DNA from: Mizuhopecten yessoensis
Taxonomy: Eukaryota
Assembly (NCBI RefSeq): GCF_002113885.1
Contig: NW_018408528.1
Location: 511,252-575,251, forward strand
Direction: 5' to 3'
Length of the DNA stretch: 64,000 nt
This document shows positions 1 through 41,600 of this stretch, one piece after another. The notes beneath the pieces are model-generated. The model ran no database searches. It saw nothing but the letters and a program-made list of their open reading frames with translations, and was not told the origin of the DNA. The translations under genes were made by a program, and so were the position numbers. Position 1 is the stretch's first letter. Each line of letters opens with the position of its first letter.

Positions 1-3000
1 GCAAAAAGGTTTATATTAGAAGTAACTTCACAAGTAATATCATTTATGAATAAAAGAAAAAAAAGGACCTAAAACTGAACCTTGGGGAACACCAGCTGTA
101 ATATATATCAGACTAGAGCTGTAACCTTCAAATATTACTTTTTGCAATCTATTAGTTAGTCAATTTTCAAACCAATTATATATATTACCAGAGATAGCAT
201 ATTTGTTTATAAAACAACCCTCTATGCCAAACCCAGACATTTCTTGATACTGTAGTAAAGTGTGACTTTTACAATATCTTATTTACATATGCATTGTACA
301 TGTATAAATGAATTAGATAAATCAGTTTATGAGTATATGTGCGATTGTTATTTAGCATACATATTAACCAATTCTTATTTTTCATGTCTGAATATTTGGT
401 GCTTAGCACAGAGCCATTTCATCATCATACTTTTTATATATACATATAGTATATGTTTTTATTACTGGTTTGTATACTTTTCTTGTTTTTTAGTTCCATG
501 ATTGATTTTCCCCAAGCTATGTGATTCTAATTTAATTACATCTGTTATCCACTTCATTTTATTTATTCCGTAAGCTTTTTGGCTTACAAGATACAGGACA
601 TATTTCACGAAATAAATGAACTACAGTTGGTACAAAGTTTATGCAGTTGTACAGTTGACAATTTGGTATATGCACACACATACACACGCAAACAGGCACG
701 GACACAAGTGATGTATGTACACACGCATACACACACACATGATATATATAGAATACAAGTCCAGCACGGAGATATACCTATGTGTTTACAGTGATTCAGA
801 AAAATCTAGCACCTTTACATCAATCATATATCACTGATGTGTATGTTTCAGTAGGTTGATGCACTTTTCCAAATAATGATGCAGGATTTTCTTAACCTAC
901 ATTGACAGTTTGCACTAATATGTTAAGTTTTGAGAACATATCTCCTATGGTATAAACATTTTCAGATGACTGACTCTCGCTTTTTCTACTGCAAAAAAAA
1001 TGAAAATATTTATATCTTGTTATTCCCAACAATTAAATCAGTTTCAATTTCCTAACACTTTATTGTAAATACAGTAATAAATACAGTATAACAGTACAGA
1101 GTTGAGAATGAAGAACTGGTATAAACAAAAGGATAAGAGAACAGTCTAAGTCTATATCAGTCTTCTCCTCAAATCTCATATAGTTGATCAACTACCAGAC
1201 CAAACTAACAGAAGGGGGGAAATCACCACAACCCCAAATAAGTAATCAATAATAAATATTCTGGAGTTTTTTTCATGATTACTAGTATATTTGATGTATT
1301 ACAGTATTTCCAAATCAATAAATCATTTTATAAAATCTACCAATTAAAGTGCTATCAAAAATCTCCTCTGGAAAAATAAACAAATTTTGTCAAATTAATG
1401 TAAAATAAATATTAAAAAATTAGATCAAATTAATGTAAAATAAATATTAAAAAAATATATCAATGAAATAAAAAACATTTATTCTAAAATATTTAATAAC
1501 ATTTCATTAATATCAGGTTTGTCTGGCTTTAGTAATTCAATTAAAATATTGATAATCCTCCCACACTCTTACATTTACATCATAGTGATCAGAAATGAGT
1601 TGTAATTACTTAAGCAAACACTTTCACCAACTCAGGGATGGGTTGCTGGCTCTCTTTTGTCCCATATACCAGGTAATAATGATCGTGAGGGACGCAGATA
1701 ATGGCTCTAATTAAACAGGCCAAGCAGTAATCAGGGTCTGGCCTAACTTAGATGTGTGGGTGTGGCCGTGTGTATACAGATGAAGCCAGTCACTAGCTCA
1801 CATATATTGTACCAGTACTCAGAACCAATTATTCAATCCAGAAAAAAATCCTGCCTCATTGTTTTCATAGATTTGCAAATTGAACAAATTAAATATTTGT
1901 CCTCGTGTGTATACAGTAAAAACTTTTATGCAACTCACTATATGAATTTCTCCAGACTTCAATACCTACAGTGCCACTAAACCATTTCTCAATCTCAAAA
2001 CAAATTTTTGTCTTCATAATTTTGCAAACTCAAGAGTTAATTGCTTATGATAGGATTGTTTTTATATATCACTTTATTCTATTATTCATACAGTAGCCAT
2101 ACTGTATCAAAAGTAATTTTAAGGTCTTTTAAATTAACAAAGCAGTTTGAAGTCTAGTTTGAGACCATTTTATTTCTAACATTGTTTCTAACAAGTTTCA
2201 CTTTTAATAAGCTTACAAATATCATACATCACCTTTTAATTCCAACTTTACCTTAATTAAATAGGATTTTTAATTAAAAATATTTTTGAAAAATAAGTAC
2301 ATAGCAATTATTATTTATAAAGACAGGTAAACATTTGACATGAAGATCAGGTTATATGGTATTCTCTACACTATATTGTTTATAAGAATAAAACAATTGT
2401 CATTGGTAGAACGAAAGCAGCTAAAACTAATACTACAAATTACTACACTTCTGCATAAACCCTATTATACACACTTCACCTGTAATTTGTATTCACATAT
2501 ACTTCAACTTGCAATGATGTAAACGCTCTGGAATAAACATGCATGCAAGTGTTAAATTTGTGTACAAGTCTCTTTGAGAATGAACGAAGAATTAAATCTC
2601 TCACAAAAATACAATGACTTACAGTAGTAGTTCTGGTTCAATGCAAGTACATTTGTATCTAATTCGGCTGGAAATCTGATATTGAAGCAAATATGGAGTA
2701 CCCTATGTTATGTAAGTTACTTATGACAATCCACTCACAAGTTATTCATGTACTTTTCAAATCATCATGTTGCAGATACTTTTTTCAGATTTATATATCT
2801 TACTATCAAAGAGAAATGACAACAAGTATTAGTCCTACCTACGGCCTGTTATGTCACCCATACTGTTTTGGGACACTTGACCTAAATTTTCCCTCAATCT
2901 TATGAGCCTTACAGAATTGATCTAAAAGTTTTTATTTATTAAGGCTCTCATGCAATCATGTAGCAATGCAGTCTTTTTTTTAAGTAAAATTATATTTTTA

Positions 3001-3925
3001 TAACTGCTGTCCTTTACAAAAGGCACTTTCGGGGGAAATGTTAAGAGTACATCTTTTAGCTTAAATATCATCTGTTAAGTTACAATTATTCAACACAATT
3101 TCTTATATAGTCAGTAATACATAATTTTCATAAAACTGATTTGTTTCTGCCTTTTTTTTATTCACCTTTTCTTTCTGCTTTCCTTATACAAATGCAATGT
3201 AAATGTAAACCTTTGAAAATTGTATTAAAATGACAATCAATAATTGTTTGTGTGAAAGTGGAAGAAAGATAAGTGTGTGTGAGATTTTCTGCTATTACAG
3301 ATTACATATGTGATACACATGAACATTAACTTTGCATTGTAAAAAAAACCTGAAAATAAATAAAAATAAAAATCTGTCTTTCTAAATGTGATTTTATAAT
3401 AATTGTAAAACTAAAAGTGTCAACATTGACATTTATTTCAGAATATACACTGTTGGTGTTACTTGTTTACATTAAAACAACATCAGAGTGTCACACCATG
3501 GTGATTACACTCAGTAGCTCTAATCAAAACACATGTTATTAATGATCACCTGATCCAGATCAGACAAGTGTGACCACTAGGCCACACCCATCAACTCATC
3601 CCAGGGCCAATCAGGTGCCTAGCAGGGGGTCAGCTTGGGGGGAGGGGTCAAGGCAGGGAAACCATACACCTGACCTAAGAAGGATTTCTGTACATGAGAA
3701 ATCAGCTGTTTTTAACTTAGCCAATCATATAATGTCATTTGGAAAGTGAAAAGTATTCACCTCTCCGGCCACTCAATACAAAAACCCTGACATTTTCATC
3801 AGGGTCATGTCACTTTCTTCTGACACTGCTTGAGTTAACTTCGACCTTTGCATCTTGAACCTCAGACATTTTGAGTCGAACTTGGACATTTTGAGTGACC
3901 AGTGCCTCAGAACTAGTGCTGCATC

Positions 3926-5017
3926 ATGGATGCTTTCATTGAATCCCTCAATCAGCCATTATCTCCAGATGCTCTTGACCTTCCTGTGACCTTCAACATG
4001 TCACCTCATGACCTTCTGGATGAGGTTATCTCACAGACATTAAAAGATGAGCTGCCGGACCGTGAGTCTTTATCAGAGTATGAGTGTTCAGCCACACTGA
4101 CAGATTATGGAAGTCCAACAGAATCATGTGTGTGGGGATCATTTAATGACAATAGTGCTAGTGATTTAAACTTTGACATTGAAAACTTTGCTACGAGTGT
4201 CGGGTCATCACCTACTGAAGTGCCCCCTGGTGAAACTGTTAACTTTAATGAGCAGACAACTCCAGCGAGAAACCTGAAGAATCTGTCGCTGACCTCGTGT
4301 GAGCCAGTCTACAACAGTCCTGGTATAGACAGTCGCTTTAATGACTCACTGACCGGACTGCTGGGCAGTCCACCACCAGACAGTCCCCTCGCCAACAATC
4401 CATTCTTCAGTGACCTTCAGGCCATCCTGGTCAACGACTGTCGTGAAGACATGCTGCCACAGTCGCTGCTAGCAACTATGACGACCCAACCACAATCCAA
4501 TGTTTTTACTCGTGAGCAGGATCTACAGGAAAGTTTCAACCAACTGACAGACAGGTTTCCAGAGGATGTTAACCAGTTGTCTAGCTTCTACCGTTACCAG
4601 GCTGCTCTGGTGGAGACAGAACGTTTCCGCTCACTACATACACAGAAGTACGCCCCCGACTACCAGCGGTCACTCAACTTTCACTATGATTCCCAACTCC
4701 ATCAGATCATGACACGAGTAGAACAGAGTCTGGCTTTGTTACAGGAGTCATCCACCAGCCCATGTTCCAGTCGGGTAATTAAGCCACGCCCCCTCTTGTC
4801 TAAGAAGTCAGTGAAAGTGATGGAGGATTGGTATAAAGATCATTTAGAGCATCCCTACCCGACCGGATCCACTGTGGAGTTACTCGCAGAAAGAGGTAGA
4901 ATCAGCTGTGAGCAGGTGAAAAAGTGGTTCGCCAACAAGAGAAACAGGTCCAACAATACTCGCACACTCACAGAGATTGCCAAGGCTAAGAGGAAACGTC
5001 AGATGGCTGTTCTGTAA
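3926..5017 (+). CDS. Intronless divergent TALE-class homeobox protein (363 aa), probably of the spiralian-specific TALE (SPILE-like) expansion
   Basis: Single 363-aa ORF with good Kozak context (ATCATGG). C-terminal 63-aa homeodomain (~4775-4963) has the TALE 'HPYP' loop and helix 3 'QVKKWFANKRNR'. Acidic S/P-rich N-terminus, plus a helical block (DVNQLSSFY...RVEQSLALL) before the homeodomain. No PBC, MEIS or IRO box recognised. Confidence 0.9.
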   Translation: MDAFIESLNQPLSPDALDLPVTFNMSPHDLLDEVISQTLKDELPDRESLSEYECSATLTDYGSPTESCVWGSFNDNSASDLNFDIENFATSVGSSPTEVPPGETVNFNEQTTPARNLKNLSLTSCEPVYNSPGIDSRFNDSLTGLLGSPPPDSPLANNPFFSDLQAILVNDCREDMLPQSLLATMTTQPQSNVFTREQDLQESFNQLTDRFPEDVNQLSSFYRYQAALVETERFRSLHTQKYAPDYQRSLNFHYDSQLHQIMTRVEQSLALLQESSTSPCSSRVIKPRPLLSKKSVKVMEDWYKDHLEHPYPTGSTVELLAERGRISCEQVKKWFANKRNRSNNTRTLTEIAKAKRKRQMAVL

Positions 5018-5428
5018 ACTCACAGAGATGTCCAAGGCTAAGAGGAAACGTCAGATGGCTGTTCTGTAAACTCACCGAGATGTCCAAGGCTAAGAGGAAA
5101 TGTCAGATGGCTGTTCTGTAAACTCACCGAGATTTCCAAGGCTAAGAGGAAACGTCAGATGGCTGCTCTGTAAACTCACCGAGATTTCCAAGGTTAAGAG
5201 AAATGCAGAGGGCTGCTCTGTAAACTCACCAAGATTTCCAAGGCTAAGAGAAATGTCAGAGGGCTGCTCTGTAAACTCACCGAGATTTCCAAGGCTAAGA
5301 GAAATGTCAGAGGGCTGCTCTGTAAACTCACCGAAATGTCAAAGGCTAAGAGAAACGTCAGATGGCTGCTCTGTAAACTCACCGAGATTTCCAAGACTAA
5401 GAGAAATGTCAGAGGGCTGCTCTGTAAA
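4967..5428 (+). repeat. 9-unit 50-52 bp tandem repeat built from the last 16 codons and stop codon of the homeobox gene
   Basis: Unit CTCACCGAGATTTCCAAGGCTAAGAG(G)AAAYGTCAGAKGGCTGYTCTGTAAA starts at 4967, 5019, 5071, 5123, 5175, 5225, 5276, 5327 and 5378. Confidence 0.95.
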
Positions 5429-6163
5429 ACCTTCTGGGACAATTCCAAAACTATAGGACTCTAACATTTGTGATCTACAATATGTGACTAGTTATTCATT
5501 GGAATGTTGCCAATTTAAAAGACTATACAACCAATACCATGGAAATCTACCTAAGACTAGTATAGAGCTCAGACTATATTACCAAGTGTATATAGGCTAT
5601 CAAGAAAAAAAGTGCTATGTACATATCATTCTATAAACAGTGTTGATTACAACAAATTGTGCAAACACCAAAAATAACCACATTTGTGTCAAACAACATT
5701 GTTACTTTATTTTGTGTATAAATATTAAACCTTGAACTTTGATATGATTTTTTTTTTTTTTATTCATATATGAATTCCATGTATTGAAAATGTCAAGATA
5801 CCTATTTCAATGGTAATGATATTTTTGTGCTTTTCACACATACATTTATTCATCAAGTGATTTTACAGATTTCAAACATATTATTTGAAAAGCAGTGATG
5901 CGCTAAAATAACATTCAACTATCAAAAGTATCTTAATATTGTTTTATTTGACATGCAAAGCATATCAGGTTTTCTGAGTAGTAAGAAAATCTTCCATCCT
6001 GCAAATATGGTCCCAAGTCAGAGGTTCTAAAAGTGGTGTGTCAAGTCTATATAGCATTTGTGGTTGATATAATCAGACTTAACTGAAAGTTTCAAATTCA
6101 GAAACAAATCTTATATCAATAACTATAATGGAGACTTTGGTCTTGAACTTGGGACCATGTTGA

Positions 6164-6677
6164 AACAAGAGGCCCAGAAAGTAGGTCAAGGTCATTTTAA
6201 AGAGGAAACTTTATAGCACTCTATCCCTGGTACCTACTGGCCAAATATCATGACCCTGGGCCTTATGGAACTTGAGAAGATTGTTAAAGCTTTTAATCAA
6301 TGTTGTCTTTTGACCCCCAACTAGCACTTAAAGTTGACCTTTAACCTCATTACTGTGAATAAGAAAAAGATTTGCACTGCTGGTCTACATATATAACATA
6401 CTCAAGTATTATGACTATAGTCCAAATGGTTCTTAGGATATTGTTGTTTGAAGGTTTTAACATATTTGACCCCTGTGACCTTGAAACTATGTCAAGGTCA
6501 TTTTAATGAGAAAATTTTATAGCACTCCTTCCCAGGTACCTACTGGCCAAATATCATGACCCTAGGTCCTCCAGTTCTTCAAAAGAAGTCATTTAAAAGA
6601 AAAAGTTGACGGACGGACGACAGACGCCGCATTACGGCATAAGCTCACATGGCCATTTGGGCCAGGTGAGCTAAAAA
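6164..6677 (+). mobile_element. Non-autonomous Helentron/HINE-like element
   Basis: Starts AACAAGAGGCCC, has internal repeats with GGTCAAGGTCA, a (GACG)n tract, a 3' hairpin AGCTCAC...GTGAGCT and an A-run. This architecture is typical of bivalve HINE-type repeats. Confidence 0.7.
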
Positions 6678-6794
6678 TTCTGAAAGTGATGCAATATCTA
6701 ATGCATCCTAGTGTACCTGCATGGTAAACGAGTTGTTGGTGCAAAACCCATCAAGAATAATTTGCTAACATAAAAATAAAGAAAAGTGCCCTAC

Positions 6795-22882
<16,088 letters not shown>

Positions 22883-23925
22883 GCTGCTTCCTGGGAGCGG
22901 TGTTTAATGAAGTTTCATTTTGGAAGACATCAATTTAAAGATGAAGAAAATCAACATTATTATGTTCGTAAAAAACACAATATTAATTTATAATAAAATA
23001 AAATGTTATACAGATAAAAGGTGAATCAAATGTGAACAGAAATAATGAACGATCCTTGTAAACGCGACATCTATATTTCTTGTATTTAACTAAGGACCAA
23101 CAACTCTTTGATGTTTTCAAACTATTTAAGCGGCAACTTTTGAAAGTTATAGCATAGGGTGACCAGTTTCTAAAATCTAAAAATGAAATTTGACGTATAA
23201 ACAAAAGAGCACAATTAAAGATCAATTTGTTTCACGTTGTTTATCAACAATGTTTTAAAAGTCTTAAATTTTAACCGGAAAGTCAGTTTGCAATCACTCC
23301 ATTTTAACAATACATGAACTTTCTTAATCAGCGTGTTGTCATAAAACGATGCCATTAAGTGACCAGTTCCTTTTCCTGTCAAGTGTCTGTTTGTATACAT
23401 TGCTACATTTTAAAATCAAAACAAAATGTTTCTTTTTGGTGCCGCCTCACTGCCACAGGGCGAGAACAATCAGGAACCATATTTTCTCGTTTACGGAAAG
23501 GTCACGACGGTTCCCGATTGACCACAGATAAGTTTAACATTTTTGCTATTAAATTTTTTAGCAGACAATTATGAAATGTTCTATATAAATTAATGTGTTT
23601 TTTTTTACCTTTTCCAGGTGTATTTCCATTGTTTTCTAATCCAAAGGTAAAGGTAGAAAAACTTAACTTTTCCTAATGTTTGAGCAAAACAATATTGATA
23701 TAATTTGTTTTGCTTCCTTTTCTTCACTTAATCCTTGCAGATGTTAACTAGGAGTATTTACTTTCATTACCAAAAAAATAATGACGTCAAAAACTCGCAG
23801 TTTTGTTCACAGCATAAATGCATAAAATCTCTGGGCACAGAAACAGCACTTTAAGTTGCTCAGAAGAGTCTGTGATGGTTTTAGGTTCTGCTTGGCCTGT
23901 TTTTCTATAAAACATAATGAATCTC

Positions 23926-23992
23926 ATCTTCGCTAGCCAAGTGTTCTCTTCGTATACACTCCACTTACGAAAACTTGGCTTAAGCGAAGATA
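23926..23992. repeat. Small hairpin/MITE-like inverted repeat (copy at ~28842-28908)
   Basis: ATCTTCGCTAGCCAAG ... CTTGGCTTAAGCGAAGAT. Confidence 0.55.
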
Positions 23993-24369
23993 AATGAATC
24001 TAGAATCTATTTGCAATTAAAAAAACAAGAGTTCCGCGAGATGATACAATTGATACGCCCGTCAGNCCGCCCGCCCGCCCGCGTGAAAACATACGTACCA
24101 TCAAAAGAAACAAATTTTAATTTTTATGGGTAGGTAACTTCAATTGAGCAGGCTTCTAGAGTTAGATTTCTGATGAAATAAAATTGTTATCATATAAATT
24201 TCATCTTTCCATTATTTTTTTTAAATATTTTCATTTAAAAAAAATATATTGACCTTGTTTCTTGCGTGGCAGGGTTCAATTGTACATAGATTTAAGGTCG
24301 CCTTCTAGCTTCGAGCTAGGGGGAATTTCCCTTTAGCTCAGTGATAGAGCGTCCGACTTAGGAACCTCN

Positions 24370-27300
24370 CAGGGCTAGTGGTAGCAGAAGGTCAGACGCC
24401 TTAACCACTTGGCCACCACAGGTCATAGATGTATGACAGACAGAGGTAAGCTTTAACAAGCGACTCTGTAAAACAGCCAGTTTAATGGAGTCACAATTTA
24501 CACATCAGCAAAATTTATAAGATTGACAGCTTTAAATATTATTGTACATCTAAAACTAGAATTGTAAGCTGAAGGTTAACTTAAATACATTTATATGTGA
24601 GTAAAAAAAATCATGGGAATTATAAGCTTGACTTCATATGATGGTGAATAACTTTACAAGGTTTCCAAGAAACTGAATCCAAACTTATGAGCGGATATAA
24701 CTGTAATAATCGAAAAGGATATTAACTTCAACTGTAAATAAAAAATACAAGACATTAATGACTACCTTGCTGATAAAGTGTACAATGGTTCATTGAAATC
24801 TACAAAGTGATTTCAAAGTAGTCTGGACATGTTATTTTTTTCTGAACTCAAGTTTGGAAAATGTTTGCCTACAAACAGGTGACAGGCTAATCGGCAGATA
24901 ACCTGATTCCAGTCCCTGATAATTTTGTTGTGTCACTGTTGGTATATCATACACCTCTAGCAGTTCCAGCAACATAGTTTTATGCTCCTAAACATTCTTA
25001 CCATGCTGCTATTTTAAGTATTTTTTTCATTAACAATAGAGAGAATTTCACATGCTGCTATCATTTTTCAGTGTGCTGTGGTTTTATATAGCATACTGCC
25101 TTAACTTTATTTACCACTATAATTTTAGCTAGTATGCTGCTGTTCTTTTACTTACCATGCATTAACTTTATTCCGTATGCTGTTGGAATTTTACTTAATT
25201 ATCCTGTTGTAAAGAAGAAACACATGTTATAATACTTTCAACATTTTCTAAAGAGAACATTAAATTCTTATCTTGAGGATCTATTTACCTGGTCGTACAT
25301 GATGATTTTATCAGCGGTGGTGTAGAGGAGAGTAGCCTGGGTGAACAGTTCTCTCTTCTTGTCCTTGTTCTTCTCTTTGTGGGCCTTCTGTACATAAAAT
25401 GCAGCCAGTGTGTCAAGTGCTCGCATCTGATCACGCTCGAAGTTTGGGTAGTCCAGTCCCGCATCTGTTCGGGATGCATCTAGGATCTTCACAAAGTCCT
25501 CTACATAGTTGGACTTGTAATACTCCAGCTGAAAAATGGAACAAATCATTTATGCATTTGAAAATTACGTGAGAAATCAATGTAGCTTTAAAAACTTTCA
25601 CTGTTACTTTTGGTTATTGTTACTGAATGATTTATTTCTATCGTCACCTATATTCCTATTTAATTAGTATGCATTTCATGTGCACAACTACAATCCGCCA
25701 TGTAGGATATTGGCAATACCACAGTAGCATCAGTGAAATAAAATGTATGTATATCTGAAATCATTTGCATAATACGGTGTTAAAACCTGACTGTTATATA
25801 TTTATCATCCTGGTAGTTCCCCAGAGCTGATTAATAATTAATAAATAGTGAGTAGATTGTGAAATATGCTGGATTAGTAATTACATGGACATTTCAAAAA
25901 GTGAAAATGAAATTACAAATAATGTTTTTCATGGTGATTAGTAAAACATCATTTGACGCTGAGATGTGACTCAGATCCTGATTATTATGGGTTGAATCTA
26001 CAATACAGCATCCCAAAATTCCTCTAATCATGACTGTCACAAGTTGGAAACTGATTTAGACTTACAGCAAGAGTGACCCAGATGTGAAGTGGAGCCACTT
26101 CCTGTCGCAAAATACTGAGAACTTCATCTCCCTCAGGCAGCTGGTCAAGATCGAGCTCGATCACCTAAAGTAACAGAATAACAAAAAGCTTTTATGCTGT
26201 ATCTTATGCATGTTCATATTCAATAAATATATGTTAACTTATAAAATCACAGTGGAAAATAGCCAGTCCCTGCAGTAGGTTTGTTACTGATCCAGTGTGG
26301 AGGGATCTTTTTCCTGTTGCTAAATTGGCATATGCTAGTACATTGTATTATCTTTTTATAAAGCAAAACCTGCCTCCATTACACATTGAAGTTGTTTTGG
26401 GGCTGAAAATGTGACTTCCAGTTTGATAAGCAGTGAGGTTTTTCAGGTCGAACAATATTAATTAATGTCCCATAGTTGTGAACTATTAATAAACATCATT
26501 CATTAACACTGGATTAAGTTTGTGGAGACTCCCCATATGATGTTGTCTGGTCATCTCTTTGAATTGTTCATGAAATAAGTAACCACTTTATATATATCTC
26601 TATTGTACATTTCAGCTGGAATTTCAGTTATTTTTGTCAGCCTTTAGTCTGGAAATTGTCTAAATTGATAGAAACATCGCGAGAATTATACTGACTAATT
26701 TTTCCTCAAAACAAAGAATAAAGTTGTTTTTCATCAATTTTTGTTGGTTTCATAAATGTTTGATTGTATTAATTCCATTAAACTACAGGCAGTTTATCAT
26801 TTACTTAGCCTTCAGTTGAGAGCATGGTGAAACATGTGCAAAAATGTGTAAGAAACTAGTGTATTGCACTTTCCTGGGGCAAGTGGGCCAGCTTATTGCA
26901 CTTGCCAAAGCATTAAAACTGGTTGTCCTGGGCATTGGGCAAGTAGATTTTTACACCCCTGCAGACCTTACTACATTTACTTGATAAATGTTTAGAAAAC
27001 AAACCTAGAGATTGGCAATCTCATGTGAAATGTTAACTTTGAAAACATTAAATATCGGTTGAACTAATTTTTCAAACAATATGTCTGCAACCTCCACCTT
27101 CCCAGTCCGACACAATACCGATCAAACTTAAGGAAAATTCCTTCGACAACAGAGCTAGGTGACCATAATCCTATAACTAAAGTCTGTCGCACATCATAAC
27201 CAGGAAATCATGGAATATCAATGAAAATTGCTGTTATTTTTTTCATTAAATGTTTCCCTTCTCAAAAATGCCAACATCAAAGTATAGACAACACCTCACA

Positions 27301-35605: not shown

Positions 35606-38600
35606 CTGTAAACAAATACCACATATTTAGTCATAATAGATCAGGTTGATGGTAATTTTGTTCTGTCAATGAACAAACATTTTTTAAAGTGGACAGTAAA
35701 ACTAATAATAATGGTTAAGTAGCCATATTACACTGTCTGTTAATACTACACTGTCTGTTAATACTACACTGTCTGTTAATACTACACTGTATGTTAATAC
35801 TACACTGTCCGTTAATACTACACTGTCCGTTAATACTACACTGTCTGTTAATACTACACTGTCTGTTAATACTACACTGTCTGTTAATACTACACTGTCT
35901 GTTAATACTACACTGTCTGTTAATACTACACTGTCTGTTAATACTACACTGTCTGTTAATACTACACTGTCTGTTAATACTACACTGTCTGTTAATACTA
36001 CACTGTCTGTTAATACTACACTGTCTGTTAATACTACACTGTCTGTTAATACTACACTGTCTGTTAATACTACACTGTCTGTTAATACTACACTGTCTGT
36101 TAATACTACACTGTCTGTTAATACTACACTGTCTGTTAATACTACACTGTCCGGTAATACTACACTGTCTGTTAATACTACACTGTCTGTTAATACAACA
36201 CTGTCTGTTAATACTACACTGTATGTTAATACTACACTGTCCATTAATACTACACTGTATGTTAATACAACACTGTCCGGTAATACTACACTGTCCGGTA
36301 ATACTACACTGTCCGTTAATACTACACTGTATGTTAATACAACACTGCCTGTTAATACTTCACTTTTAATACTACACTGTCTGTTAATACTACACTGTCT
36401 GTTAATACTACACTGTCTGTTAATACTACACTGTCTGTTAATACTACACTGTCCGGTAATACTACACTGTCCGTTAATACTACACTGTATGTTAATACTA
36501 CACTGTCCATTGATACTATACTGTCTGCTAATACTTCACTGTTAGTACTACACTGTCTGTTAATATTACACTGTCAGGTAATACTACACTGTCCAGCAAT
36601 ACTACACTGTCCATTAATACTACACTGTCCGTTAATAGTACACTGTCTGTTAATACTACACTGTCCGGGAATACTACACTGTCCGTTAATACTACACTGT
36701 ATGTTAATACTACACTGTCCATTAATACTATACTGTCTGCTAATACTACACTGTCTGTTAATACTACCCTGTATGTTAATACTACACAGTCCGTTAATAC
36801 CATACTGTCCGTTAATACTACACTGTCTGTTAATACTACACTGCCTGTAAATACTTCACTGTTAATACTACACTGTCTATTAATACTACACTGACTGTTA
36901 ATTCCACACTGTCTGTTAATACTACACAGTCTGTTAATACTACACTGTCCAGTAATACTACACTGTATGTTAATACTACACTGTCCATTAATACTACACT
37001 GTCCGTTAATACTACACTGTCTGTTAATACTACACTGTCGGGTAATACTACACTGTCTGTTCATACTACACTGTCTGTTAATACTATACTGTCCGGTAAT
37101 ACTATACTGTCTGTTAATACTACACTGTCTGTTAATACTATTCTGTCCGGTAATACTACACTGTCTGTTAATACTATACTGTCCGGTAATACTATACTGT
37201 CTGTTAATACTACACTGTCTGTTAATACCATACTGTCCGGTAATACTACACTGTCTGTTAATACTATACTGTCCGGTAATACTATACTGTCTGTTAATAC
37301 TACACTGTCTGTTAATACTATTCTGTCCATTAATACTATACTGTCTGCTAATACTACACTGTCTGTTAATACTACACAGTCTGTTAATACTACACTGTCC
37401 GGTAATACTACACTGTCTGTTAATACTACACTGTCGGGTAATACTACACTGTCTGTTCATACTACACTGTCTGTTAATACTATACTGTCCGGTAATACTA
37501 TACTGTCTGTTAATACTACACTGTCTGTTAATACTATTCTGTCCGGTAATACTACACTGTCTGTTAATACTACACTGTCGGGTAATACTACACTGTCTGT
37601 TAATACTACACTGTCTGTTAATACTATTCTGTCCATTAATACTATACTGTCTGCTAATACTACACTGTCTGTTAATACTACACAGTCTGTTAATACTACA
37701 CTGTCCAGTAATACTACACTGTATGTTAATACTACACTGTCCGTTAATACCATACTGTCCGTTAATACTACACTGTCTGTTAATAGTACACTGACTGTTA
37801 ATTCCACACTGTCTGTTAATACTACGCTGTCTGTTAATACTACACTGTCCGTTAATACTACACTGTCTGTTAATACTACACTGACTGTAAATTCCACACT
37901 GTCTGTTAATACTACACTGTCTGTTAATACTATACTGTCCATTAATACTATACTGTCTGCTAATACTTCACTGTAAGTACTACACTGTCTGTTAATATTA
38001 CACTGTCAGGTAATACTACACTGTCCAGTAATACTACACTGTATGTTAATACTACACTGTCTGTTAGTACTACACTGTCTGTTAATACTACACTGTCTGG
38101 TAATACTCCACTGTCTGTTAATACCACACTGTCTGGTAATACTACACTGTCTGTCAATACTACACTGTCTGTTCCCTGTGTATTTACTTCAATACTACAC
38201 TGTCTGTTAATACTACACTGTATGTTAATACTACACTGTCCGTTAATACCATACTGTCCGTTAATACTACACTGTCTGTTAATACTATTCTGTCCATTAA
38301 TACTATACTGTCTGCTAATACTTCACTGTAAGTACTACACTGTCTGTTAATATTACACTGTCAGGTAATACTACACTGTCCAGTAATACTACACTGTATG
38401 TTAATACTACACTGTCTGTTAATATTACACCGTCTGTTAATACTACACTGTCTGTTAATACTGCACTGTCTATTAATACTACACTGTCCGGTAATACTAC
38501 ACTGTCCGTTAATACTACACTGTATGTTAATACTACACTGTCTGTTAATATTACACCGTCTGTTAATACTACACTGTCTGTTAATACCATACTGTCCGGT

Positions 38601-41600
38601 AATACTACACTGTCTGTTAAGACTACACTGTCTGGTAATACTACACTGTCTGTTTATACTACACTGTCTGTTAATACTACACTGTCTGTTAAAACTATAC
38701 TGTCCGGTAATACTACACTGTATGGTAATACTACACTGTCTGTTAATACTACACAGTCTGTTAATACTACACTGTCCAGTAATACTACACTGTATGTTAA
38801 TACTACACTGTCTGTTAATACTGCACTGTCTATTAATACTACACTGTCCGGTAATACTACACTGTCTGTTAATACTACACTGTCTGTTCCCTGTGTATTT
38901 ACTTCATATGCAAACAATGAGCTGATTATATAATTATCCGTGAAAAATTTCACAAACCATTTCTCCATTCATTTAATATATATTCCATATGCATTAAAGT
39001 ACTTGGAACAGATAAAATATTATTAGAAATACAGAATTTGACAGTAACATCAGGATCCTTGTAATCTCTCTATGAACATTGGATACAATATTGGTTTCTT
39101 GATATTGTACATCACTGATTTAATACTAATTGATCTATTTCATTGTTATTGGTTTGGTGACACTAATACTAGTAAAAGTTAAGTAATTGTAGCCAGACTT
39201 TGTGCTCACAAAAAAACTTACAAACCATATACAATGTATATCTCCAAATGATTTGTATATACACTGGTCTTAACATGGCTTTGAAATTAAAGTTGACATA
39301 TATATCATCAGAGATTCCAAGGCTAAGATTGATATATCAATCACAATGGAATATTGTAATTAGATCTAACAATTTGGTTTATACAAACCACTATGTACTG
39401 ATGTTCACTATACCCTATGCTTTCTGACTGCAACAGAGTTACCTACCCTTGCCATTTTTTCCAGACTTCTCTCCTTTACCGACCATGTTAAGCTCCTGAA
39501 TGTTGACTTCCTTTATCTGTTTCTCCAGAGTTTCAACTTCCTTGCTCTGGCTTTCTTTTTTCTCATCTGAACTTTTTAATTCTTCTTCAACCTCCTCCAT
39601 GCATTTTGAGTCTGTATTAAATGTTTTTACACCTTTTTCCAATTCTCCCTTGACATCCTCAGCATCCTTTCTAATTTGAGTGATCTCCCTTTCCTGTTCC
39701 TGCCTGCACTCCTCCAGTTCCTGTTTTTCTGAGGTGACCTGTTTTTCAAGTTCCGAAATCTTTTCATTGTTAATTTCAAGGTCCTTAACACAAGTGTCAG
39801 TTTTGTCTTTAACAATAAGTATATCAGATCTGTAGGATTTCTCCCGGGTTTTCTCCGCATTGATTATGTCAACCCAACTGACAGCTGCGAGTTGAACCAC
39901 TTCAGCCTCGTTCTGATTGTAGGTCTGCTGTAGACACGTCATCTCCTCCCCGATGCTGTGTTTCTGGTCTAGACTTTGACGATCCTCATCCTCCAGGCTT
40001 ACCAGTTCTGTTGGCAAGTAAATATAATAAAAAGATAAATATAATCATATTTGTAATATTGTCTTTTTATATCTTAAATGTATTCTCTAATTCTACATAT
40101 CTGTGTATTGTAACTGTTTAATATGTACATGAATGAGAGAAGGAAAATAATAAACAACAGGTCGGACATATCATAATGTAAATATCCTACATTCCTCAAT
40201 ATGTATTTCAGATTAATTCAAGAGTGAATGGTCATTTAAAAACAATTAAATGAGGAAAATTTATCTCTTGATATTCTTGTTGCTTATTCAAATCATCACA
40301 TCAGAGTTATTGGAAAGAGAGCCTAAAAATAAATGTGCATGAAAATGAAGCAATTCGGAGAATTTAATTTTTTACTACATATGCATGCTCTGTGAACGTT
40401 TTATGGCTGACAATTTAATGTAACTTGATTGAAAACAGATGTAAAGACACTATAACATACCTGTATCTATCATCTGTAACTGGGACTCCTGCATTCGTAT
40501 TCTTTCCTGTTGCTGGGACACAAGTCTCTGCATCTTCACCACCTGAGGGTCAGGTTCAAGGACCTCTTTGACACCCACTAACGCACTTCCATTGTGGTGA
40601 TCATCAGGCATGGTGTATTCTTCAATCAGCACCTCCTTACGGGAGTTTTTAAGAACATCTGGAAAGTTACTGTCAAGGTCATATTCCTCAACCTCACTGT
40701 TGACAGGACGTGCGTGGTATACAGGGAGACTGCCTATTGCATGTGCTGGCTGAGTCAGATCAAGGCTGTCAGCCCTTGGTTTCTGTGGAACCGGTTGAAA
40801 TGCTGAAGGTCGCGAAACACGATTCTGCACCAAAGGCAAGATAGAAATACTGCTTTCATTGTTATTGTTGCTACCTATACTTGGTTTAACATTTCCATGG
40901 GTATTGGTAATGCCAGAACTGTGTTGATGAGAGAATGAATGATTGGTTGTTTTGCTATGAGATCCTCCTGCCTGCTGGAAATTATTGTAAGGGGAGGCAA
41001 CTCTATGGTGCTCAGTTCTGTGCTGAGCCTGACGAGTCCGAGGCCCAGTTTGCTGTAGTAAAGAAGGATGTGGATCTGGATTTACATGAGTTCTTTCCCT
41101 TGGATACACATTTTCCCCCTGAACTTGGGAATGGAGCTGAACACGGGGGTCAAGGTCAGAGTTTACACTATTATGGCTATTAAGGGGTAGAATATTTGGT
41201 TGAGGTTCTCCTCCTTGCGTAGCTTTCAAGCGAACACCAACCCCATAAACTGGATTCTGTTTAACCTCTCTGTGCCGAGGCAAGATTGGTTGAGAATTTA
41301 CAGAACTGGTTTCATGTTTGTCTAAGTTCTTTCCCATCTGTAAATATCTCTGACGCGGCCGTGCTGCCTCAGGCGCGACATGATGAGCACCACTAAATGT
41401 CAATGACTTACGAATCCCTGTGTCTCGGGGAGCAGAGGTCAAGTTTATTTTTGGTTTGTTATTCTCCTTTTGTTGATTTGTAGGTGGAATGTCTGTCTTT
41501 TGTTTCCCAGAATGCTTCAACAATAATTGCACCTCCGTGGCATATTCCCCCCATTTCTGTAAAATCTTCACGGGACATTCATCTGGTAAAAGAGGGCGCT

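What the first reader, a model, noticed from the sequence alone, without database searches (positions are those of the whole stretch)
3926..5017. Intronless divergent TALE homeobox gene nested antisense inside a CTR9 intron
Seen: CTR9 (-) is reconstructed only to ~aa 653, ending in a phase-1 donor at 6795. I found no next exon (expected GAVLAHKG...) in 1-6794, so the + strand homeobox ORF sits in an intron of >6.8 kb. Known: CTR9 is ~1,100+ aa, canonical TALE genes (PBX, MEIS, IRX, TGIF, MKX) have introns, and spiralians have a lineage-specific TALE expansion active in early cleavage. Inference: a retroposed or young TALE gene is hosted by an essential, broadly transcribed elongation-factor gene. 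That location could give it open chromatin in oocytes or embryos, and could cause sense-antisense interference.
Basis: partly seen in the sequence, partly recalled or inferred. Interest (0 to 1): 0.8.

Follow-up and report, generated by a model that had tools for sequence, protein, structure and literature searches.

The report
Known SPILE homeobox gene inside CTR9
The open reading frame is a real, working scallop homeobox gene of the already described spiralian-specific SPILE family; it is old rather than young, and it sits with a sister gene inside an intron of CTR9, an arrangement kept in scallops, pearl oysters, mussels and probably true oysters.

Summary
Window 3926-5017 (+) is an intact 363-aa single-exon ORF with a TALE homeodomain. 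It lies antisense inside a 24,512-bp phase-1 intron of CTR9. The missing next CTR9 exon is 17.7 kb left of the window, and the rest of the gene follows it.

The gene is not young or newly retroposed. It is Mizuhopecten yessoensis XP_021369004.1, already listed as a SPILE A/C-clade gene whose best matches are oyster CgTALE10 and mussel MvSPILE-10 (PMC8524836).
- Pairwise dN/dS among four scallops is 0.05-0.11.
- About 510 bp of upstream sequence is 85% identical in those scallops.
- All seven SPILE loci found in this genome lie in single open frames, so lacking introns is a family trait.

The same intron also holds a second, un-annotated SPILE gene of the TALE-V type. The order SPILE2 then SPILE1, opposite to CTR9, recurs in Pecten, Ylistrum, Pinctada and Mytilus coruscus, and probably in Saccostrea. 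I found no paper that mentions this nesting.

By orthology the likely role is a cleavage-stage blastomere-fate transcription factor. Any host-guest regulation is untested.

The gene is already known. The conserved nest is a modest new detail.

The parts
3926..5017 (+). SPILE1 coding sequence, 363 aa in a single exon (M. yessoensis XP_021369004.1, SPILE A/C-clade TALE homeobox gene)
   Evidence: ORF. Pfam Homeobox_KN and Homeodomain. The homeodomain string is identical to entry My_XP_021369004_1 in supplementary file 6 of PMC8524836. dN/dS is 0.05-0.11 among four scallops.
4775..4963 (+). 63-residue TALE homeodomain (aa 284-346), with WFANKRNR in the recognition helix
   Evidence: Ungapped alignment to the PBX1/Exd homeodomains. 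Foldseek matches PBX1/Exd at about 1 A rmsd over 58 residues. W334, F335, N337 and R339 are invariant in 39 homologues.
4502..4756 (+). PADRE-like conserved helical region (aa 193-277) directly N-terminal to the homeodomain
   Evidence: This region is shared with paralogues: query 107-359 against the C3450 pair, 155-357 against the D-clade gene, 188-346 against SPILE2. It is conserved in 39 homologues. AlphaFold2 predicts three long helices at pLDDT above 90. The PADRE domain is defined in PMC5322547.
3415..3925 (+). Conserved upstream block, the putative own promoter and 5' UTR
   Evidence: Mean column identity is 85% in four scallops although dS is 0.76-1.2. It holds two invariant CCAAT boxes. 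It has 7 TGACA/TGTCA motifs against 1.1 expected, five of them invariant.
1494..1994 (.). Single-copy conserved non-coding element about 2 kb upstream of SPILE1
   Evidence: About 68% identical to Pecten and Ylistrum at the equivalent position, and partly conserved in Argopecten. There is only one copy in the genome.
4966..5428 (+). 52-bp minisatellite, 9 copies, whose first unit is the last 17 codons plus the stop of SPILE1
   Evidence: Tandem Repeats Finder and self-matches. The C-terminus itself is conserved in all four scallops.
1..6794 (-). The part of the 24,512-bp phase-1 CTR9 host intron that lies in the window; it continues left to contig base 493,534
   Evidence: Donor G|GTAGGG after base 6795. 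Acceptor ttgtAG|GA at L009:2283/2282. Length.
6795..6882 (-). CTR9 exon ending ...AANGI-G, corresponding to human CTR9 residues 625-653
   Evidence: PDB phmmer E=1e-11 to human CTR9 chains. Sequence.
7552..26164 (-). Upstream CTR9 exons (N-terminal two thirds of the protein), scattered over this span
   Evidence: ORF scan. The exon at 7552-7818 matches human CTR9 557-625 at E=7e-33. These exons are conserved in Pecten, Ylistrum, Argopecten, Pinctada and Mytilus.

Best explanation
Window 3926-5017 encodes a functional, ancient member of the spiralian-specific TALE (SPILE) homeobox family, A/C clade. It is Mizuhopecten yessoensis XP_021369004.1, whose best matches are oyster CgTALE10 and mussel MvSPILE-10. 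The protein has a disordered N-terminal half, a roughly 85-residue helical PADRE-like region and a 63-residue TALE homeodomain. The gene has one coding exon and, by inference, its own CCAAT-box promoter. Together with a second single-exon SPILE gene (TALE-V type, 10.8 kb upstream, same strand) it lies antisense inside a 24.5-kb phase-1 intron of the Paf1-complex gene CTR9. That two-gene nest dates back at least to the common ancestor of pteriomorph bivalves. By orthology, the product most likely acts as a sequence-specific transcription factor switched on in early cleavage that helps set blastomere (macromere/quartet) identity. Shown here: gene identity, nesting, age of the nest, purifying selection, and promoter conservation. 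Inferred: time and place of expression, developmental role, and DNA target.
For: Identity: Pfam and PDB matches to the TALE homeodomain. The homeodomain is identical to My_XP_021369004_1, which PMC8524836 classes as SPILE A/C-clade, with best hits CgTALE10 at 1e-94 and MvSPILE-10 at 4e-105. Function is kept: pairwise dN/dS is 0.05-0.11 in the N-terminal, PADRE-like and homeodomain parts alike, and homologues occur across bivalves. Own promoter: the 510 bp upstream is 85% identical in four scallops and carries two CCAAT boxes. Nesting: host exons lie on both sides. Conservation of the nest: annotated minus-strand TPR genes of 1144-1290 aa span the orthologue in Pecten, Ylistrum, Argopecten, Saccostrea and Pinctada. 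In Pinctada both flanking CTR9 exons and both SPILE genes are in one locus, and Mytilus coruscus has SPILE2, SPILE1 and then the AANGIG exon in that order. Family trait: all seven SPILE loci found in this genome lie in uninterrupted frames. Orthologue expression: CgTALE10 is among the novel TALE genes expressed from egg to blastula (PMC5322547). MvSPILE-10 is detected from the 4-cell stage and is macromere-specific at the 16-cell stage (PMC8524836).
Against: No expression data for this scallop could be examined here. Transcript ends are not mapped. The backbone of the SPILE A/C clade is unresolved, both in my tree and in the literature, so one-to-one orthology to CgTALE10 and MvSPILE-10 rests on best hits plus shared position. 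SPILE expression patterns are known to change quickly between lineages (PMC8524836). In Saccostrea the host gene is identified as CTR9 only by its length and Pfam pattern, because no host exon lies within the 21-kb locus.
Confidence: 0.85

Rival explanations
1. This is a young or recently retroposed TALE copy that landed by chance in a CTR9 intron.
For: The coding sequence has a single exon, while canonical TALE genes have introns (established knowledge).
Against: The same gene sits next to the same CTR9 exon in all four scallops and Mytilus coruscus and between both flanking CTR9 exons in Pinctada; in Saccostrea it lies inside a CTR9-like host gene. All seven SPILE loci found in this genome are also single open frames. 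dS between scallop orthologues is already 0.76-1.2. No intron-bearing parent gene was found in the genome search. An ancient retroposition at the origin of the whole SPILE family cannot be excluded, but that would not be 'young'.
Confidence: 0.04
2. The nesting is functionally meaningful. Transcription of CTR9 (maternal or ubiquitous), or chromatin kept open by it, permits very early zygotic activation of the two SPILE genes. Alternatively, antisense transcription couples host and guest expression, and selection has therefore kept the nest.
For: The two-gene nest has persisted in four bivalve orders. Orthologues are activated as early as the 4-cell stage. No other coding genes were seen in the intron; the only other long ORFs are repeat- or reverse-transcriptase-like fragments.
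Against: A gene inside an intron is hard to move without damaging the host, so long persistence is expected even without any function. The guest has its own conserved promoter. A close Mytilus trossulus copy lies outside CTR9, between unrelated genes. The oyster TALE-V partner is reported as barely expressed at any stage (PMC8524836). No expression or chromatin data were available.
Confidence: 0.15
3. This is a decaying or non-functional ORF that merely keeps a homeobox-like stretch.
For: The N-terminal 140 residues are predicted disordered and poorly conserved outside scallops.
Against: The frame is intact in every species examined. dN/dS is about 0.1 even in the N-terminal part. The start, stop and C-terminal tail are conserved.
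Confidence: 0.01

Closest known systems
SPILE (spiralian-TALE) A/C-clade genes: CgTALE10 (CGI_10019518) of Crassostrea gigas and MvSPILE-10 of Mytilisepta virgata (PMC5322547, PMC8524836)
   Same: The TALE homeodomain, the PADRE-like region upstream of it, and a single coding exon in the orthologues I checked (not these two named genes). These are the best matches in the published tables. The window gene itself is listed there as My_XP_021369004.1.
   Different: Nothing in kind. The published work does not mention its position inside a CTR9 intron, and scallop expression has not been described in the papers I could read.
TALE-V clade: CgTALE6 (CGI_10019516), MvSPILE-13, and My_NW_018408528.1_504212-504400
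   Same: This is the neighbouring gene in the same intron, on the same strand and with the same architecture. It forms a 100/100 clade in my tree.
   Different: It is only about 29% identical to the window gene over the PADRE-like region plus homeodomain. It is longer, at 463 aa. The oyster member is reported as late and low in expression.
Canonical TALE families (PBX/Exd, MEIS/PKNOX, TGIF, IRX, MKX)
   Same: The 63-residue homeodomain with the three-residue loop. PBX1/Exd are the best structural and sequence matches for the homeodomain alone.
   Different: Pfam finds no PBC or MEIS N-terminal domain even at E up to 1. There are no introns. Homologues were found only in bivalve or unnamed records, and the literature describes the family as spiralian-specific.
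Nested (intronic, opposite-strand) genes in animal genomes
   Same: A guest gene with its own promoter lies wholly within a host intron on the opposite strand.
   Different: Here two paralogous developmental transcription-factor genes share one host intron, and the arrangement is kept across bivalve orders.

Membership tests
TALE-class homeobox | Three extra residues between helix 1 and helix 2, giving a 63-residue homeodomain | tested here: met
   The alignment to the PBX1/Exd homeodomains is ungapped across the loop (LEHPYPT against LSNPYPS). Pfam Homeobox_KN scores 44.9 bits against a cutoff of 24.
TALE-class homeobox | The homeodomain fold, with WF-N-R in the recognition helix | tested here: met
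   W334, F335, N337 and R339 are invariant. The AlphaFold2 homeodomain superposes on PBX1/Exd at about 1 A rmsd.
SPILE, A/C clade | Placement among spiralian-specific TALE genes of the A/C clade | tested here: inconclusive
   The homeodomain is identical to the entry that PMC8524836 classes as A/C-clade. My tree groups it with bivalve orthologues and separates it from the D-clade gene and from TALE-V, but the backbone is unresolved and no limpet SPILE-A/C sequences were available to me.
SPILE, A/C clade | A PADRE domain of about 87-90 aa directly upstream of the homeodomain | tested here: met
   A conserved region at aa 193-277 is shared with paralogues and with 39 homologues, and is predicted as three confident helices. 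No public PADRE profile was available, so the match rests on position and conservation.
SPILE | Expression in early cleavage with blastomere-specific patterns | not testable with these tools
   Only orthologue data from papers are available: CgTALE10 from egg to blastula, and MvSPILE-10 from the 4-cell stage.
PBX or MEIS/PKNOX families | A PBC domain or a MEIS/PKNOX N-terminal domain upstream of the homeodomain | tested here: not met
   The Pfam scan at E up to 1 lists only Homeobox_KN, Homeodomain and a sub-threshold HTH_69 match.
Recent retrogene | An intron-bearing parent gene, young age, and a lineage-restricted insertion | tested here: not met
   All seven SPILE loci found in the genome are single open frames. 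The gene is at the same position in four bivalve orders. dS among scallops is 0.76-1.2. I did not search for target-site duplications or a poly(A) remnant.
Nested intronic gene | Host exons on both sides, spliced across the guest gene | tested here: met
   A GT donor after base 6795 and an AG acceptor at L009:2283, with the flanking exons matching consecutive residues of human CTR9 (625-657 and 653-707). Splicing itself is inferred from sequence and from annotated orthologues.

The most novel reading that the evidence does not exclude
The CTR9 intron is an ancestral home of two SPILE A/C-type genes and has been kept for reasons of regulation. For example, host-gene transcription or chromatin state in the oocyte and early embryo may license their very early zygotic activation. 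If so, the position could serve both as a regulatory unit and as a synteny anchor. Such an anchor would resolve which A/C-clade SPILE genes existed in the bivalve (or molluscan) ancestor, a point the published trees leave open.
Probability: 0.15. Interest if true: 0.6.

Novelty: already known. Interest (0 to 1): 0.35.

Why it matters
SPILE genes are lineage-specific transcription factors linked to blastomere fate in spiral cleavage. Published homeodomain trees cannot resolve how many A/C-clade genes the bivalve ancestor had. The shared position found here, two SPILE genes in the same order in the same CTR9 intron in scallops, pearl oysters and mussels (and in a CTR9-like host gene in true oysters), gives orthology evidence that does not depend on those trees. 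It shows that at least the CgTALE10/MvSPILE-10 type and the TALE-V type already existed side by side in the pteriomorph ancestor. It also corrects the idea that this is a young retrocopy, and it flags an un-annotated but selectively maintained SPILE gene in the scallop genome. Beyond that, the gene is an ordinary, already catalogued family member.

Tried and rejected
- Three ENA assemblies of unknown species (L023-L025) showed no CTR9 exon and no second SPILE gene within 10 kb of the homologue. Host introns can exceed 20 kb, so this says nothing either way.
- The Dreissena homologue and the window's own protein were not on record for context look-up.
- The Mytilus trossulus copy P0008 is not nested. 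In the tree it groups with the nested M. coruscus copy, so it is either a moved copy or a lineage-specific duplicate. I could not tell which.
- Foldseek of the full model against the PDB matched only the homeodomain. The PADRE-like helices had no match.
- The literal string PADRE is absent from these orthologues.
- Searches for papers linking CTR9, introns or nesting with SPILE/TALE genes found nothing relevant. The scallop genome paper was not held.
- I did not use the large representative protein search, because no claim here rests on absence of relatives.

Full report
**Observation.** The ORF at window 3926-5017 (+) is real. It is 363 aa, runs ATG to TAA, and has an in-frame stop three codons before the ATG. 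G+C rises to 0.48 over the ORF against about 0.30-0.36 in the flanks. Pfam finds Homeobox_KN (44.9 bits, cutoff 24) and Homeodomain (29.7 bits) at aa 286-341. The domain aligns without gaps to the PBX1 and Extradenticle homeodomains, including the three-residue loop that defines the TALE class.

**Host gene.**
- On the minus strand, the exon at 7552-7818 matches human CTR9 residues 557-625 (E about 7e-33).
- The exon at 6795-6882 matches residues 625-657.
- The window is G000:C5201:511,252-575,251, in a 987.6-Mb assembly of 82,659 contigs.
- I fetched the 40 kb to the left of the window and found the next exon by a short-motif scan.
- That exon starts at L009:2282 (contig base 493,533) behind ttgtAG. 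It completes the Gly codon, reads GCVLAHKG..., and matches human CTR9 653-707 (E about 6e-23).
- Seven further C-terminal exons follow, down to the Ser/Asp-rich tail.
- The intron is 24,512 bp, and CTR9 is complete.
- I searched the exons one by one by reference and did not build a joined spliced model.

**What the gene is.** The word-index protein search found close orthologues.
- Scallops: Ylistrum 83%, Pecten maximus 84%, Argopecten 80% identity.
- Homologues also occur in Mytilus, Saccostrea, Pinctada and Dreissena. They cover the C-terminal 63-70% of the protein, far more than the homeodomain.
- The literature identifies the family. Spiralian-TALE (SPILE) genes carry a PADRE domain of about 87-90 aa upstream of the homeodomain (PMC5322547; PMC8524836).
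- Supplementary file 6 of PMC8524836 lists My_XP_021369004_1 with a homeodomain string identical to aa 284-346 of this ORF. The paper classes it as SPILE A/C-clade, with best hits CgTALE10 (1e-94) and MvSPILE-10 (4e-105).
- The coordinates that paper gives for other M. yessoensis SPILE homeodomains coincide with my genome hits, which fixes the species.

So the gene is annotated and already classified.

**Is it functional?** Among the four scallops, Nei-Gojobori dN/dS is 0.05-0.11 overall and similar in the N-terminal part, the PADRE-like part and the homeodomain, with dS of 0.76-1.2.
- Start codon, stop codon and C-terminal tail are conserved.
- AlphaFold2 with 39 homologues gives three long helices at aa 193-277 (pLDDT above 90), the homeodomain at 293-345, and a disordered stretch at aa 11-140.
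- Foldseek matches only the homeodomain, to PBX1/Exd at about 1 A rmsd.
- The 510 bp upstream (3415-3925) is 85% identical across the four scallops and holds two invariant CCAAT boxes. That is far above what the synonymous divergence predicts, so I infer an autonomous promoter and 5' UTR.

**Not young, and not a recent retrocopy.**
- Every SPILE locus found in this genome lies in an uninterrupted frame of 304-770 aa. Besides SPILE1 these are the C3450 pair, the D-clade gene on C2396, SPILE2, a locus on C5568, and the two-homeodomain locus on C1345.
- The called gene spans in Pecten, Ylistrum, Argopecten, Saccostrea, Pinctada and both Mytilus species have exactly the length of the CDS.
- Intron absence is therefore a family trait.

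**The nest is old and holds two genes.** A second plus-strand ORF lies 10.8 kb upstream in the same intron.
- It spans contig 503,021-504,412 (L008:1770-3161) and is 463 aa from its first ATG.
- It is the un-annotated homeodomain 'My_NW_018408528.1_504212-504400' of PMC8524836, assigned there to the TALE-V clade with CgTALE6 and MvSPILE-13.
- Its dN/dS is 0.13-0.16, and its orthologues form a 100/100 clade.

Context look-ups show how widely the arrangement is kept.
- A minus-strand TPR gene of 1144-1290 aa spans the SPILE1 orthologue in Pecten, Ylistrum, Argopecten, Saccostrea and Pinctada.
- Scanning these loci exon by exon gives the gene order:

| Species (locus) | SPILE2 (+) | SPILE1 (+) | CTR9 exons (-) |
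|---|---|---|---|
| Pinctada (L014) | 6846-7331 | 10001-11035 | GCVLAHKG exon at 2197-2045; AANGIG exon at 14562-14470 |
| Mytilus coruscus (L026) | 658-1725 | 10001-10975 | AANGIG exon at 13239-13150, then upstream exons |
| Pecten and Ylistrum | present | present | AANGIG exon present |
| Saccostrea (L007) | present | present | none within the 21-kb locus |

- Pinctada thus shows the same intron hosting the same two genes in the same order.
- In Saccostrea the host is called CTR9 only from its length and Pfam pattern.
- In Argopecten, SPILE2 was not within 10 kb of SPILE1.
- A Mytilus trossulus copy lies outside CTR9 and groups with the nested M. coruscus copy.
- The arrangement therefore predates the split of Pectinida, Ostreida, Pteriida and Mytilida. 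From general knowledge that split is several hundred million years old; I did not test the date here.

**Likely mechanism.** The following is inference by orthology.
- CgTALE10 belongs to the set of novel oyster TALE genes expressed from egg to blastula.
- MvSPILE-10 is detected in all blastomeres at the 4-cell stage, is excluded from 1D at the 8-cell stage, and is macromere-specific at the 16-cell stage.
- In limpets, SPILE genes specify quartet identity.
- I therefore propose that the scallop gene is a cleavage-stage transcription factor contributing to macromere/quartet identity. It would bind DNA through its TALE homeodomain and probably partner through the helical PADRE-like region.
- A short intron-free unit suits fast cleavage cycles; this point rests on general knowledge.
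- The promoter carries 7 TGACA/TGTCA motifs (1.1 expected from shuffles, and at most 4 in intron windows of the same length), and five are invariant in the four scallops. TGACA is the core site of MEIS/TGIF-type TALE proteins, so auto- or cross-regulation is a testable guess.

**Host-guest coupling.** Nothing here tests the ideas of open chromatin or antisense interference. Long persistence of a nested gene is expected without function, because moving it risks the host gene. The guest's own promoter and the non-nested Mytilus trossulus copy argue against strict dependence. I give this reading about 0.15.

**Literature on the nesting.** None of the SPILE/TALE papers I read mentions CTR9, an intron location or nesting, and full-text searches for such a link returned nothing relevant. 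The library is incomplete, and the nest is visible in public annotation.

**Earlier scan note.** Note s1-512486 on this window records minisatellites seeded at coding-exon boundaries. I saw the same at the 3' end of SPILE1, in a CTR9 intron left of the window and in Pinctada.

**Verdict.** The gene is already known. The conserved two-gene nest is a modest, useful addition as a synteny anchor for SPILE orthology.

Noticed in passing
L008:1770-3161 (contig C5201:503,021-504,412; window about -8230 to -6839), + strand: A second single-exon SPILE gene (TALE-V type, 463 aa) lies in the same CTR9 intron. The published survey lists it only as a homeodomain not predicted as a gene (PMC8524836), yet it has an intact frame in five species and dN/dS of 0.13-0.16.
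   Followed up: yes
window 4966-5428: A 52-bp minisatellite of 9 copies at 93% identity starts with the last 17 codons and stop of the SPILE gene. Pecten has a single copy. The protein C-terminus is unaffected.
   Followed up: partly
window 1494-1994: A single-copy conserved non-coding element lies about 2 kb upstream of the SPILE gene and is shared with Pecten, Ylistrum and partly Argopecten. It could be an enhancer or an upstream non-coding exon.
   Followed up: partly
window 3415-3925: There are seven TGACA/TGTCA motifs (1.1 expected), five of them invariant in four scallops, plus two invariant CCAAT boxes. They may be auto- or cross-regulatory sites for TALE proteins.
   Followed up: partly
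L010:9400 to L009:1130 (contig about 490,650-492,380), - strand: A tandem array inside a CTR9 intron is built from copies of the start of the neighbouring exon (FQARHVSPSDT...). This is another minisatellite seeded at an exon boundary.
   Followed up: no
L014:13240-14388 (Pinctada imbricata): About 16 tandem 72-bp copies of the end of the CTR9 'AANGIG' exon lie inside the host intron. They may explain the inflated 1290-aa gene model.
   Followed up: no
window 9018-9366 and 10021-10369, around the N run 9421-9798: The sequence on either side of the gap is duplicated, with identical ORF translations. This looks like an assembly artefact around the gap. The gap itself was left alone.
   Followed up: no
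L006 (Mytilus trossulus): A close SPILE1-type copy (P0008) lies between a DNA-methylase gene and a dual-specificity phosphatase gene, not in CTR9. M. coruscus keeps the nested pair, so P0008 is a moved or duplicated copy.
   Followed up: partly
window 35705-38968: A very long tandem array, open in several frames on both strands (SINRQC / TDSVVL-type units).
   Followed up: no
L008:9763-10000 and window 1-68, - strand: A reverse-transcriptase-like ORF fragment (a LINE remnant) lies inside the host intron.
   Followed up: no
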